Of a stretch of DNA of 64,000 bases, positions 8,701 to 23,040 are shown piece after piece. Both the position numbers and the translations under genes were made by a program. How positions within the stretch are numbered: the stretch's first letter is position 1; every line of letters starts with the position of its first letter. Under the pieces are notes generated by a model. That model was not told the DNA's origin, searched no databases, and saw nothing but the letters and a program-made list of their open reading frames with translations. The stretch is from the NCBI GenBank assembly GCA_964187785.1, contig CAXLNC010000776.1, forward strand, positions 1 to 64,000, written 5' to 3'. Source of the stretch: Amphiscolops sp. MND2022 (lineage: Eukaryota).

Positions 8701-9299
8701 CAAAACCAGATTTGCTGGGATCCTTCTGAGTTTTGCGGGACTTGTCATTTGTTGGTTCTTCTGGTGCCCTTCTTCGGGCTGGGAAATAAGCACAAACGCC
8801 AGAAATTCGCGATAAAGAGGGAGAAGTCGGGAACTGGCACACCCTGGGTTTGGAAGCCCCCGCCCTCCAAACATCCAGCATCCAACAATAAATGACCAAA
8901 GCGAACGACATTTGGCCACTACACCTGTCTTCTCTCTCCCCCACTTCCTTACCTTCTCGCTTGATTTTCGCTCACTTTCCGATTTTATCTTGTTGTTTTT
9001 TTGTCAATGCAACTTCTCCAGCCTTAATTTGGTCAAAGAATTCCGACGTTTCCTTGGCCATAATCGGCTACAATCGGCTCAGAAGCGGCTAAAATTGGCT
9101 AAAAGATTGGTTAGAACAGATTGGCTAAAACTGGCTGAAAAGGGAGGGTTTCGTTTCACAGTTAAGGCGCTGAGAGATTTACACATAAAGTTCTTTCCCT
9201 GTGTTTGCAGTCTTTCTCACTAGCTTCTGCCTACTTTTGCTCGTTCAACACTATCCCTGTTTTACTGGTCTCGTGAGAGGTCCTCTCTCTAAGGAAGCG

Positions 9300-10850
9300 T
9301 CACAAAACTAAGGTGAGGTTATGAACTCGCCAAGGCTGCAACTCATCCAAGGAATGGATGGTGCTGGATCCTGACCTTAGAGGCCCAGCAGCGATACTTT
9401 TCATATCGCAAAACTATTTGGTGCTTGTTTGTGGGGGGGGGGGTATCACACAATTATCGCGCGATATGTTGCAAAATGGGGTACCGTTGACAAGGAAATT
9501 GAAGTGAAACTAATTCCGTGATAATATTTGTCCGCTTTCGCTTTCGTATTGATACTAAAATTGGACAGATGATCTTTTTGCATTCATGTTCACATAGATA
9601 CTTCACCCCGAATTACACTTTCGCTTTCGCTTTCGTAATTCTGAAGGTTATTAATTCGGAAATCATGTTGTTTCGCTTTGCGTTAATTTCTGTGTCAATG
9701 GTAACGGGGTATCACAAAGATCGTGACAGATGTGCCTGTGTGAAACTAGGCGTTAAGGGGGGCATCGTGCCCTTATTGGGGAGCTGTTAACCTCCCTGAC
9801 GAGGTATCGCGCCATATGGCGTATCGCAGCGATGGTATCGCAATATCGCACGATACGGGGGCACTAAGATCCTGACAGCAAAACACCAGTGGCTGTGACC
9901 TGATGAGGATCCAAGCCAAGGCGACCTGCACACTCTAGCAGGACGACGTGGAGAGAGCTGTCGACTGAGAAGAGTATCGAGGAGCAACGGCCAGACAAGA
10001 GCACAACATTTAGCGTCACAAGGGGAAAGCTCCTATACAACACTAACTTCTCCCGGAGCTCATTCGACACAACAGTCTCATTGTTTCCTCTGAGCTCCTC
10101 AGACGCAGATGGCGGGGCCAAAGAGCACTGAGAGGCTACTGCCATGATAAAGTCATAGCTGTTCCTGAGCTCCTTGGACGCAAACACAAGCGCTCCAAAA
10201 GGGTCCTTGGACAAAGCTGCCATGACAAACTCGTGGTTGCTCCTAAGCTCCTCTGACGCAAAGAGCTTGGCTTCTACCGAGTCCTCGGAGAAGAGTGCCA
10301 TGACAAACTCGTGGTTGCTCCTCAGCCCAAGCTCCTCTGACGCAAAGCGCCTGGCTCCTACAGGGTCCTTTGAGAAGAGTGTCAAGACAAACTCGTGATT
10401 GCTCCTCAGCTCCTCTGACGCAAAGCGCGCGGCTGCTGCAGGGTCCTTGGAGAAGAGTGTCATGACAAACTCGTGGTTGCTCCTAAGCTCCTCTGACGCA
10501 AAGCGTACGGCTTCTGCAGGGTCCTTGGAGAAGAGTGTCAAGACAAAGTCATGGTTGTTCTTGAGCTCTCTGGGAGCAAAGTGTAGGCACAAGGAAGTCT
10601 TGCAGCCTGCTGCAATGACCACCTCTTCACTGTTCTCAAGATCTTCGGACGCAAGCTGCAGGGACAACAACTTCTTGGAAGCCACAATGACAGCCGCATA
10701 GTTGCCATTGAGCTCTTTGGAGTCAGACTGCAGCCCCATAGCATCCTGGAAAACTGCTGCCATGACAACTTCATGGTTGCTCTTGCTAGCCAACTGGAGG
10801 ATGACTTCACTGCTTGCTTCTTCCCGACGGTGGCTCTGAGCCAAGACCAT
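9300..10850 (-). CDS. DUF4116-repeat protein with C-terminal ubiquitin-like domain, paralog 1; exons 10850-9877 and 9375-9300 if the MITE is spliced out
   Basis: ORF 9864-10850 has ASEELRSNHEFVM-type repeats, then LVTLNVVLLSGR...GVLLSGS. Sequence 9375-9300 continues SGSSTIHSLDELQPWRVHNLTLVL*, matching the C-terminus of paralog 2 (SGSKTIHSLKELEPWQVHNVTLVL*). The start codon is uncertain. The DUF4116 and Ubl assignments are from motif recognition. Confidence 0.75.
9376..9868. mobile_element. MITE with 8-bp TSD (introner candidate)
   Basis: TIRs CTTAGAGGCCC / GGGGCACTAAG. TSD ATCCTGAC at 9368-9375 and 9869-9876. Internal GCGATA/TATCGC repeats. A partial sister copy lies at 15403-15562. Confidence 0.9.
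9483..9702. mobile_element. Nested MITE inside the 9376-9868 element
   Basis: TIRs ACCGTTGACA / TGTCAATGGT. 8-bp TSD AATGGGGT (9475-9482) / AACGGGGT (9703-9710). The sister copy at 15403-15562 lacks this insert. Confidence 0.8.
10150..10570 (-). repeat. Intragenic tandem repeat of ~75-81 bp units encoding DUF4116-type repeats
   Basis: About five near-identical units of gacaaactcgtggttgctcctaagctcctctgacgcaaag. Confidence 0.85.
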
Positions 10851-11264
10851 TGCAGATTGGAGTCACTTGGGAGCTGTCTGCATGAAACATCTGAAGCTCC
10901 AAGTAAGTTTGGGTCGATGCCCCCGATCTGGCCAAAATGCGCGCCCCTTAACATGCGTATTTTTCTGCAAATTTTTATTTTTTTCTACGCCTCAAGCTCG
11001 CCCCTTTTTCAACACTTGCGGTCCTTATGCTCATTAGACTTGAGGTCACCTGTTGCCCAAGTGTGAGCCCCGCACCCCCACAAACGTCTTGCGAAAACTG
11101 TTGAAACTAGCAAACTATTGATTGAGGCATCTGCCAAAAAAACCCAACATCCAAACACCAGCTCATCATGTTCCCAAACAAGCCGCATGCACTTGAAAAC
11201 AATGATTTCAGCAAGGATGTTTCAGAGCTGCTGCCATTAGGCAACCCAAATGCCCCGCAGCGTT

Positions 11265-11337
11265 GCCCCTTAGCGTGCCCCTTAGCGTGCCCCGTAGCGT
11301 GCCCCGTAGCGTGCCCCTTAGCGTGCCCCTTAGCGTC
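11265..11337. repeat. 12-bp tandem repeat (GCCCCT/GTAGCGT)n
   Basis: About six units of tagcgtgccccy/g inside a MITE-like segment. Confidence 0.85.
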
Positions 11338-11715
11338 CCGACCACTGTTTTTCCGCAGGTTTTCCGCGTTTAAATTTCCCCCAAAACCTCTTCCTGCAAC
11401 ACATGTTGGGGCCACGCTAAGGGGCACGCAAATTCCCCACCTTAAGGGGCACCAATTTCCAACAATGATTCCTAAACAGCTTGCCCTTGTCCTTGCCATC
11501 CACCACACAAGAAAGAACAGACTTGTTCAAGAGGTCTGCATTACATGATATTTTCGATTGAAGGCCTGATTTTCCTACCTCCCTGTGCCAGTAGCCACAG
11601 AGCACGAAACGTCTTGCAAACCATGCAAACGAGAGTCCCAAACCACAAGTAGAAACCTCTGAACACTGCCACAGACCATCAATTGGAGTAGTGGCATATA
11701 AGTCCCCATGTTTTT

Positions 11716-15402: not shown

Positions 15403-15562
15403 GGCCCAGCAGCGATACTTTTCATATCGCGTGATACTTGTAGCGATAGTAGATACTATCGAAGAACTCTTTCGTGCTTGTTTTTACAGGGTATCGCACA
15501 CTGCTCATGTGATATGTTGCAAAATGTGGTATCGCACAGATGTGCCTGTGAAACTAAGTACC
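15403..15562. mobile_element. Truncated copy of the 9376-9868 MITE family
   Basis: ggcccagcagcgatacttttcatatcgc...gcaaaatgtggtatcgcacagatgtgcctgtgaaact matches both halves of the 9.4-9.9 kb element. Confidence 0.85.
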
Positions 15563-22092: not shown

Positions 22093-23040
22093 TTACAGAA
22101 CCAAGGTGACATTATGAACTTGCCATGGCTCCAACTCCTTTAAAGAATGGATGGTCTTGGATCCGGACAGCAACACGCCGGTGTGTTGCACCTTGGTAGG
22201 GTCGAAACCAAGGACCTCTGCACACTGCCCCAGGACGGAGTAGAGAGGGATGCTGACTGAGAAGAGTATCGAGGCGGAACGGCCAGACAAGAGAACCACA
22301 CTCAACACCACAAGGGGAGAATGCCTAAAGGCCAGCAGACTCTCCCGCAACTCATATGCCACAACAACCTCCTTGTTCCCTCGGAGCTCCTCAAACGCAA
22401 ATTGCTGGTCCTCAAGGTCCTTGCAGACTACTGCGATGACAAACTCATGGTTGTTCAGGAGCTCCTCGGATGCATAGAGCAAGGCCACAGGGTTCTTGGA
22501 GACTGCTGCCATCACTATCTCATCATTATTCCTGAGCTCCTTGGACGCATGCTGCAGGGCCCAACCACACTTGGAGACTGCTGCCATCACTACCTCGTGG
22601 TTGTTCTTGAGCTCCTCGGATGCATTTTGCAGGGCAAGAGGCTCCTTCGAGACTGCTGCCATCACTATCTCATAATTGTTCTTGAGCTCCTCAGATGCAA
22701 AATGCAAGACAAGGGGCTGTTTGGAGACTGCTGCCATGACCAACTCATGGTTGCTCTTGAGCTCTTCGGACGCATTCGCCAGGGCGTCGGGGCAGTTGGA
22801 GAATGCTGTCATGACTATCTCAGCATTGTTCCCGAGCTCCTTGGACGCATGCTGCAGCTGCTCAGAGGTATCCTTGTACAACGTATCCTTGTCCAACATA
22901 CCCGTCCTGAGCATGTTGAAGACTTCTTTCAGGTCTCTCTCTATGACTCTCTTGTGGTTGTGCTTGAGCACAGTGGGCGCAAGGACCATACGTCTGAGCC
23001 GAATACACTGCTGAAACAAGTCAGCTGGTGGCTGAAGCAT
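22093..23040 (-). CDS. DUF4116-repeat protein with C-terminal ubiquitin-like domain, paralog 2 (uninterrupted, 315 aa)
   Basis: About six ASEELKNNxEIVMAAVSK repeats, then VVLSVVLLSGRSASILF...LLSGSKTIHSLKELEPWQVHNVTLVL*. Colinear with paralog 1. Confidence 0.8.
   Translation of the reverse strand: MLQPPADLFQQCIRLRRMVLAPTVLKHNHKRVIERDLKEVFNMLRTGMLDKDTLYKDTSEQLQHASKELGNNAEIVMTAFSNCPDALANASEELKSNHELVMAAVSKQPLVLHFASEELKNNYEIVMAAVSKEPLALQNASEELKNNHEVVMAAVSKCGWALQHASKELRNNDEIVMAAVSKNPVALLYASEELLNNHEFVIAVVCKDLEDQQFAFEELRGNKEVVVAYELRESLLAFRHSPLVVLSVVLLSGRSASILFSVSIPLYSVLGQCAEVLGFDPTKVQHTGVLLSGSKTIHSLKELEPWQVHNVTLVL

What the first reader, a model, noticed from the sequence alone, without database searches (positions are those of the whole stretch)
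9300..9876. Introner-like MITE: the insertion carries its own splice sites and would be removed seamlessly from a DUF4116-Ubl gene
Seen: a 493-bp TIR element with an 8-bp TSD interrupts the gene and brings an in-frame TAG. On the coding strand the layout is ...CT[GTCAGGAT CTTAG...CTAAG]GTCAGGAT.... Removing 9876-9376 (GT...AG) or 9871-9371 (AG|GA donor, CAG|G acceptor) gives the same 501-nt intron. Either restores LLSGSSTIHSLDELQPWRVHNLTLVL*, which matches the intronless paralog at 22093-23040. Known: introner transposons create introns from TSD- and terminus-derived splice sites, and dinoflagellates accept GT/GC/GA donors and favour AG|G. Inference: this is intron gain caught in progress, with the paralog as the ancestral state. 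The downstream exon has kept its frame and stop.
Basis: partly seen in the sequence, partly recalled or inferred. Interest (0 to 1): 0.82.

Follow-up and report, generated by a model that had tools for sequence, protein, structure and literature searches.

The report
Old transposon-made intron candidate, unproven splicing
A small jumping-gene copy sits near the end of a repeat-protein gene exactly as in the known "introner" introns of dinoflagellates and was probably spliced out for a long time, but it is old rather than caught in the act, and no RNA data could be found to prove the splicing.

Summary
The minus-strand ORF 9864-10850 (six DUF4116 repeats plus the start of a ubiquitin-like domain) ends at a TAG inside a 493-bp insert (9376-9868). 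The insert is flanked by the 8-bp duplication GTCAGGAT. Removing the insert plus one duplicate restores ...LLSGSSTIHSLDELQPWRVHNLTLVL*, as in the uninterrupted paralog at 22093-23040.

The insert belongs to a very high-copy MITE family with CTTAG...CTAAG ends and 8-bp target duplications. Its layout (donor GT from the duplication, acceptor AG|G from the element end) matches the 8-nt-TSD introner classes published for the dinoflagellate Polarella glacialis.

- **Age.** The insertion is not recent. Three more diverged gene copies in another assembly carry the same insertion, and the four element copies form one clade.
- **Composition.** The 493 bp is composite: a ~273-bp MITE with a second, nested TIR element.
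- **Specialisation.** Eight independent family copies show no splice-compatible target bias.

Splicing is not shown, because no RNA data were available. Indirect evidence favours it. The upstream reading frame stayed intact after the insertion. The cut-off 21 codons encode two essential strands of the domain. In three of the four copies those codons changed mostly synonymously.

Verdict: a new example of a known kind, of modest interest. First readers flagged other introner-like cases elsewhere in this genome.

The parts
9877..10850 (-). Exon 1 / ORF of the interrupted DUF4116 + ubiquitin-like gene. The firmly constrained coding part is about 9877-10583; the first ~90 codons carry frameshifting differences between paralogs.
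   Evidence: ORF; six DUF4116 hits, E 2e-39. Only in-frame indels occur at 9877-10583, against 1-nt indels at 10584-10850.
9869..9876 (-). Target-site duplication copy 1 (GTCAGGAT), the proposed 5' splice site (GT). A GA donor at 9871 gives the same mRNA.
   Evidence: It is unchanged in all four insertion-bearing copies.
9864..9866 (-). In-frame TAG supplied by the element's CTTAG terminus. It ends the protein if the insert is not spliced.
   Evidence: ORF calls P0001, P0002 and L004 89-1279 end at the same place.
9376..9868 (-). The 493-bp insert: a MITE of a very high-copy family (ends CTTAG...CTAAG, 8-bp duplications), composite here.
   Evidence: Depth 10^3-10^4 times the flanks and 458 contigs breaking at 9376. 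Nine independent family copies in L005-L011; eight of them have matching 8-bp duplications, six perfect and two 7 of 8.
9726..9868 (-). 5' arm of the MITE on the coding strand.
   Evidence: Aligns to short-form copies at about 85% identity.
9484..9725 (.). Nested second TIR element (ACCATTGACA...TGTCAACGGT). Present in the window and L001 only; absent from L002, L004 and most family copies.
   Evidence: Alignment A1. Joints 9483->9726 are abundant in all four runs.
9376..9483 (-). 3' arm of the MITE, ending CTCTAAG (the proposed acceptor AG at 9376-9377). It lacks about 29 nt near 9409 that other copies have.
   Evidence: Loose ends 'behind 9409' with a conserved consensus.
9300..9375 (-). Proposed exon 2. 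It starts with duplication copy 2 (9368-9375), then 21 codons STIHSLDELQPWRVHNLTLVL and TGA (9300-9302). It encodes strands beta-4 and beta-5 of the ubiquitin-like domain.
   Evidence: Frame and stop are kept in all four copies. The model of the paralog places strands at residues 295-297 and 308-314.
22093..23040 (-). Uninterrupted paralog (315 aa), with the empty target site ATCCGGAC at 22161-22168.
15403..15556 (+). Partial, degenerate short-form copy of the same MITE family. It lacks the other arm and clean termini.

Best explanation
A non-autonomous DNA transposon (a MITE of about 273 bp, ends CTTAG...CTAAG, 8-bp target duplication) inserted into codon 325-327 of an ancestral DUF4116 + ubiquitin-like gene and duplicated GTCAGGAT. 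On the coding strand, the first duplicate supplies a GT donor and the element's last bases supply an AG acceptor followed by G. The spliceosome can therefore remove 'duplicate 1 + element' and restore the original message exactly. This is the published introner mechanism of dinoflagellates. The intron-bearing gene was then duplicated at least twice. In the lineage of the window copy the intron also took in a nested second MITE and lost about 29 nt, reaching 501 nt. Shown here: the insertion, its family, its age, the empty ancestral sites, and continued selection on the upstream reading frame. Inferred: that the element is actually spliced and that the last 21 codons are translated.
For: Geometry and frame restoration. 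Family membership: extreme copy number and sharp edge at 9376; nine independent copies, eight with matching 8-bp duplications. Single old event: the same site, duplication and orientation in L001, L002 and L004, and the four element copies form one clade with 96/97 support. Empty sites: window gene 2, L003 and L004 5001-6470. The gene stayed alive after insertion. In 707 nt of upstream coding sequence there are only in-frame indels (6 nt, 240 nt). In 851 nt of element arms plus 3' flank there are 10-14 indel events, nearly all out of frame. No stop codon has arisen, although about 6 nonsense changes are expected if the element's branch lengths are taken as the neutral clock. The cut-off piece is structurally needed: the modelled domain is a beta-grasp fold (pLDDT about 90; ubiquitin, SUMO and ISG15 hits at TM 0.65-0.73), and strands 4 and 5 lie after the insertion point. 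The ...TLV(L/I) tail is kept in relatives at only 35-40% identity. In the window, L001 and L004 copies, exon 2 changed at 4 synonymous and 2 non-synonymous sites (binomial p = 0.025). Its pN/pS of 0-0.19 matches the 0.18 seen between uninterrupted paralogs. Both duplicates and the GT / AG|G bases are unchanged in all four copies. Literature: P. glacialis introner classes with an 8-nt TSD GHN6, donor from the TSD, acceptor from the element end (TAAG or TAGG), working in either orientation (bioRxiv 10.1101/2020.10.14.339549). A complete relict dinoflagellate spliced leader lies upstream of a related gene in the sister assembly.
Against: There is no RNA evidence at all. The runs found look like low-coverage DNA, and no transcript-derived protein spans the junction. 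The gene family evolves fast: pN/pS is 0.5-0.9 over much of the protein, and the coding sequence is no better conserved than its flanks. In L002, exon 2 looks relaxed (six of 21 residues changed, pN/pS about 0.9). The exon 2 statistics rest on six substitutions, with one copy excluded after the fact. Divergence along the locus is mosaic (left arm 81%, right arm 94% between window and L001), so gene conversion may blur the comparisons. None of the nine independent family copies lies in a convincing coding exon.
Confidence: 0.65

Rival explanations
1. Plain disruptive insertion. The element is not spliced, and the gene copies make a protein truncated at ...LLSGS (or are decaying pseudogenes). 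The downstream 21 codons merely have not yet broken.
For: No RNA support. pN/pS is high across the family and the coding sequence is no more conserved than its flanks. There are 1-nt frameshift differences in the first ~90 codons between copies. Exon 2 of L002 evolves near neutrally. With only 76 nt, about one indel is expected per pair, so an intact exon 2 is weak evidence. The MITE family shows no splice-related target preference.
Against: The upstream frame has been kept free of stops and frameshifts over a period in which neutral sequence gained 6-10% substitutions and more than one indel per 100 nt. So the product is under selection, yet a product ending at LLSGS lacks two strands of its beta-grasp domain. 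The exon 1 part of that domain is the best-conserved part of the protein (pN/pS 0.3-0.57). Exon 2 shows a synonymous excess in three copies. Splice dinucleotides and both duplicates are unchanged in four copies.
Confidence: 0.27
2. Recurrent independent insertions of family members into a hot-spot target (GTCAGGAT) in several paralogs, rather than one old event.
For: Short and long forms occupy the same site in different copies.
Against: The four gene-resident elements group together against eight independent copies (96/97 support). They share derived bases, orientation and an identical duplication. The long form is explained by a nested second element with its own inverted ends. Independent copies show no target consensus.
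Confidence: 0.02
3. Assembly artefact: a repeat copy wrongly placed inside the gene.
For: The element is extremely repetitive.
Against: The same junctions occur in three contigs of an independent assembly. A read contig of another organism's run spans 9840-10017, though with only 29 element letters plus the 8-nt duplicate on the element side, just under the tool's 31-letter rule for bridging. A perfect 8-bp duplication flanks the insert.
Confidence: 0.01

Closest known systems
Introner-like elements (ILEs) of Polarella glacialis with 8-nt target duplications (classes 6, 8, 10, and class 1 with TAAG/TAGG ends). Roy et al., bioRxiv 10.1101/2020.10.14.339549; Curr Biol 2023.
   Same: [quoted passage not shown] The element's terminal ...TAAG gives the AG acceptor, followed by exonic G. 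Symmetric ends can work in either orientation. One family copy here ends TAGG instead of TAAG (L008 8730-9008). The host looks like a dinoflagellate.
   Different: Sequence identity to the published consensus could not be checked, because the sequences are not held. Splicing is not shown here. The independent copies sampled lie in non-coding contexts and show no G-first target rule, so the family behaves as a general MITE rather than a dedicated intron maker.
Introners of Micromonas, Aureococcus and many other eukaryotes (Gozashti et al., PNAS 2022, PMC9860276; PNAS 2025, PMC12130899).
   Same: The general mechanism: a transposon insertion in an exon, with splice sites carried by the element and/or recruited from the target duplication, removed exactly.
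   Different: Those families are defined by many similar introns in unrelated genes backed by annotation or RNA. Here only one insertion event, later copied by gene duplication, is documented.
hAT-type MITEs
   Same: 8-bp target duplication, short terminal inverted repeats, subterminal short repeats (GCGATA / TATCGC), non-autonomous, about 270 bp.
   Different: The termini begin CTTAG rather than the usual hAT YARNG. No autonomous partner or transposase was found, so the superfamily is unassigned (P and Merlin elements also make 8-bp duplications).

Membership tests
Introner / ILE-derived intron | The sequence is a copy of a multi-copy transposon with recognisable ends and a target-site duplication. 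| tested here: met
   Depth 10^3-10^4 times the flanks and a sharp edge at 9376. Nine independent copies share the termini; eight have matching 8-bp duplications.
Introner / ILE-derived intron | Element plus one duplicate is bounded by usable splice dinucleotides, and its removal restores the reading frame. | tested here: met
   GT...AG (9876-9376) or GA...AG (9871-9371). The restored tail matches uninterrupted paralogs.
Introner / ILE-derived intron | The element is actually spliced from transcripts. | not testable with these tools
   No RNA run holds the locus. Laid contigs look like DNA. No transcript-derived protein was found. Only indirect evolutionary support exists.
Introner / ILE-derived intron | Homologous genes without the intron show the unoccupied site. 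| tested here: met
   A single GTC[A/G/C]GGAT in window 22161-22168, L003 and L004 5001-6470.
Introner / ILE-derived intron | Many family members form introns in unrelated genes. | tested here: inconclusive
   Nine independent copies were examined and none lies in a convincing coding exon. One (L009 10208-10481) restores a 340-codon ORF, but its translation looks non-coding. No genome annotation was available.
P. glacialis 8-nt-TSD ILE classes | 8-nt duplication of form G-H-N6 on the coding strand, with the acceptor from the element end TAAG/TAGG. | tested here: met
   GTCAGGAT and ...CTCTAAG|G. A TAGG variant occurs in L008. Description.
P. glacialis 8-nt-TSD ILE classes | Sequence similarity to the published class consensus. 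| not testable with these tools
   No supplementary sequences are held, and the journal version is not held.
hAT superfamily MITE | 8-bp target duplication. | tested here: met
hAT superfamily MITE | Terminal motif YARNG and a related autonomous hAT transposase. | tested here: not met
   The termini are CTTAG(T/A)GGCCC. If TAGNG is taken as the end, the flanks no longer match. No autonomous copy was seen.

The most novel reading that the evidence does not exclude
A general-purpose MITE family with no target preference for splice-like sequence became a working intron only because this one 8-bp target happened to start with GT. That intron then survived at least two gene duplications and grew by capturing a second MITE. 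The four copies (275, 279, 493 and 515 bp, one with a duplicated acceptor) would form a dated natural series of intron birth, persistence, growth and, in one copy (L002), possible failure.
Probability: 0.45. Interest if true: 0.45.

Novelty: new member of a known kind. Interest (0 to 1): 0.3.

Why it matters
Transposon-made introns are the leading explanation for bursts of intron gain, and dinoflagellates are the best-known case. This locus adds a clean, easily tested example. Filled and empty paralogs lie in the same 64-kb window. Three further filled copies of different age and size exist. The cut-off piece encodes two essential strands of a ubiquitin-like fold, so function depends on splicing. 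The locus does not change the picture: mechanism and geometry are already published, and the key step, splicing, is unproven here.

Tried and rejected
1. RNA evidence. Both run searches gave only runs that behave like low-coverage DNA. The single read-laying run listed only high-depth joints inside the repeat, so a single-copy 9877/9375 joint could not be seen either way.
2. Transcript-derived proteins. Searches with the truncated ORF and with the C-terminal domain of P0004 found only ORF calls on genomic contigs.
3. Gene tree for monophyly of the insertion-bearing genes. It was unresolved with 294 columns. The element tree was used instead.
4. Rate comparison between partitions. It was uninformative because divergence is mosaic and the coding sequence is as diverged as the flanks.
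5. Other family copies acting as introns. ORFs running through element copies were used to fetch nine independent insertions. None has a Pfam-bearing flank. The one long restored ORF (L009) looks non-coding.
6. Organism identity from window ORFs. Pfam scans gave nothing useful, and there is no spliced-leader match in the window. A complete relict leader was found only in the related assembly.
7. Published ILE sequences for direct comparison are not held.
8. A 9-bp duplication (Mutator-like) was rejected: the family-wide duplication is 8 bp, and the ninth base is the element's own C.

Full report
**What is in the sequence.**
- On the minus strand, an ORF runs from ATG 10850 to TAG 9864-9866 (328 aa). 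It carries six DUF4116 repeats (E 2e-39).
- The coding strand reads ...GCT GTCAGGAT CTTAGTGCCCCC ... GGGCCTCTAAG GTCAGGAT CCAGCACC....
- The repeat finder reports GATCCTGAC at 9367-9375 and 9868-9876, 501 nt apart.
- After the second repeat, the frame continues S-T-I-H-S-L-D-E-L-Q-P-W-R-V-H-N-L-T-L-V-L-stop, with TGA at 9300-9302.
- The paralog at 22093-23040 (315 aa) reads straight through...GVLLSGSKTIHSLKELEPWQVHNVTLVL*. It has one copy of the target (ATCCGGAC, 22161-22168).

**The insert is a real, very abundant transposon.**
- Contigs from four public runs of two organisms were laid on 8800-11600. They pile up 10^3-10^4 times deeper over 9364-9927 than over the flanking gene.
- Hundreds of contigs break exactly at 9376 into unrelated sequence (458 in X3, agreement about 0.3).
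- I used an ORF that happens to run through the element as a protein query. This recovered 26 ORF calls on other contigs of ENA assembly ERZ25074608, and I fetched seven of those contigs.
- They hold nine independent copies with the same ends (CTTAGTGGCCCCAT...CTGGGCCTCTAAG). Eight copies have matching 8-bp duplications, six perfect and two at 7 of 8: GAAGAGAG, CATGTGGC, GTGATAAG, GCTTCTCC, ACCCCACA, ACAAGGTG, TTCGCCTG, CATTTCAG.
- The duplication is therefore 8 bp. The ninth shared base at this locus is the element's own C.
- There is no target consensus. Only 4 of 16 strand readings start G[A/C/T], about what chance gives.
- None of these copies sits in a convincing coding exon.

**The 493 bp is composite.**
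- Alignment A1 shows that the common family form is about 273 bp.
- The window copy and L001 carry an extra block, 9484-9725, with its own inverted ends (ACCATTGACA...TGTCAACGGT). This is a nested second MITE.
- The window copy also lacks about 29 nt near 9409.
- The read joints 9483->9726 and the loose ends at 9409 confirm that most genomic copies are the short form.
- A degenerate partial copy lies at 15403-15556.

**The insertion is old, not in progress.**
- The closest proteins to the truncated ORF, P0001 and P0002, also end at ...LLSGS.
- Their contigs (L001, L002), plus a third gene on L004 (89-1279), carry the element at the same site, in the same orientation, with the same GTCAGGAT on both sides.
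- L001 is 89% identical to the window over 2.6 kb, and L002 is 81-84% identical.
- The four gene-resident elements form one group against eight independent copies (ultrafast bootstrap 96, SH-aLRT 97). Their terminal branches are 0.06-0.10.
- This points to one insertion followed by at least two gene duplications.
- Run X1 holds contigs that match the window exactly as well as variant contigs, and the contigs across the junction carry L001-type bases (9882, 9888). This suggests both forms occur in one organism.
- Uninterrupted relatives (window gene 2, L003/P0004, L004 5001-6470/P0003) have a single GTC[A/G/C]GGAT. They are more distant (pS 0.23-0.51, against 0.10-0.21 within the filled group).
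- The paralog is therefore a fair picture of the ancestral state.

**Is the element spliced?**

No RNA evidence could be obtained. Both run searches returned only runs that behave like low-coverage DNA. No transcript-derived protein spans the junction. The argument is therefore indirect.

1. *The gene stayed under selection after the insertion.*
   - In the 707 nt of upstream coding sequence (9877-10583), the only indels between copies are 6 and 240 nt.
   - In 851 nt of element arms plus 3' flank there are 10-14 indel events, nearly all out of frame.
   - No stop codon has arisen. About six would be expected from the fraction of substitutions that create stops (2.6-3.4%) and the element's branch lengths.
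2. *The part cut off is needed.*
   - An AlphaFold model of the paralog gives a confident C-terminal beta-grasp domain (pLDDT about 90). It matches ubiquitin, SUMO, ISG15 and UBX domains (TM 0.65-0.73 over about 78 residues).
   - Strands 4 and 5 (residues 295-297 and 308-314) lie after the insertion point.
   - The ...TLV(L/I) tail is kept in relatives at only 35-40% identity.
   - The exon 1 part of the domain is the best-conserved part of the filled copies (pN/pS 0.3-0.57, against about 1 in the linker).
3. *Exon 2 changed mostly synonymously in three of the four copies.*
   - In the window, L001 and L004 copies, exon 2 changed at four synonymous and two non-synonymous sites (binomial p = 0.025).
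   - Its pN/pS of 0-0.19 equals the 0.18 between uninterrupted paralogs.
4. *The splice signals are unchanged.* Both duplicates, the GT and the AG|G are identical in all four copies.

Several points weigh against splicing:
- The family evolves fast (pN/pS 0.5-0.9 overall).
- The coding sequence is no better conserved than its flanks, and divergence along the locus is mosaic.
- Exon 2 of L002 looks relaxed.
- The exon 2 test rests on six changes, with one copy excluded after the fact.

I put the probability that the window copy is spliced at about two in three.

**Comparison with what is known.**
- Roy et al. (bioRxiv 10.1101/2020.10.14.339549) describe P. glacialis introner classes with 8-nt duplications of form GHN6. 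In these, the duplication gives the 5' splice site and the element end gives the 3' site, in either orientation. One class has ends of TAAG or TAGG.
- They also report GT/GC/GA donors and a conserved G after the acceptor.
- This locus fits that description point for point, and one family copy here ends TAGG (L008).
- A complete relict dinoflagellate spliced leader (GCGTAGCCATTTTGGCTCAAG) lies 50 nt upstream of a related DUF4116 gene in the sister assembly. That supports a dinoflagellate origin.
- Other notes of this scan on the same genome point the same way, although one follow-up called it an animal.
- I could not compare the element with the published consensus sequences.
- The superfamily is unassigned. 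The 8-bp duplication suggests hAT, P or Merlin, but the CTTAG ends do not fit the hAT motif.

**Verdict.** This is a new example of a known kind of intron origin. First readers flagged several other introner-like cases elsewhere in this genome; I did not check them.

Noticed in passing
window 9484-9725: A second small TIR element (ACCATTGACA...TGTCAACGGT) is nested inside the first MITE. It is present only in the window and L001 copies, and this region is itself highly repeated in the read data.
   Followed up: partly
window 8988-9175: Another very high-copy repeat lies just downstream of the gene (depth up to 10^3 times the flanks, edge at 9014). It is built of degenerate ~10-nt units like GGCTAAAATT, and the same stretch follows all four filled paralogs.
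   Followed up: no
window 10584-10850 (and L001, L002, L004): The first ~90 codons of the ORF differ between paralogs by 1-nt indels (near 10753 and 10585). Only the window copy reads in one frame from the first ATG. In the others, and in P0003/P0005, the ORF enters through the other frame (MKLSWQQFSR...). The true start, or an unrecognised small intron, is unclear.
   Followed up: partly
L004 1541-1553: This copy has a 6-nt duplication (CCTAAG) at the element's 3' end, giving two AG acceptors 6 nt apart. Using the first would add two in-frame codons.
   Followed up: no
L004 89-1629 and 5001-6470: A filled and an uninterrupted paralog lie in tandem 3.4 kb apart on one contig, like the two genes 12 kb apart in the window.
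   Followed up: no
L010 1460-1480: A near-complete dinoflagellate spliced-leader sequence (GCGTAGCCATTTTGGCTCAAG) lies 50 nt upstream of the ATG of an intact 469-aa DUF4116 + ubiquitin-like gene. This is the signature of a retroposed gene.
   Followed up: partly
L009 10208-10481: This family copy has the duplication ACAAGGTG/ACAAGCTG. Excision restores a 340-codon ORF, and AG|GT inside the duplicate could serve as both splice sites. The translation is proline- and arginine-rich and looks non-coding.
   Followed up: partly
window 11244-11337: A short tandem repeat (reads GHAKGHATG... in one frame) has about 10-fold excess depth in all runs.
   Followed up: no
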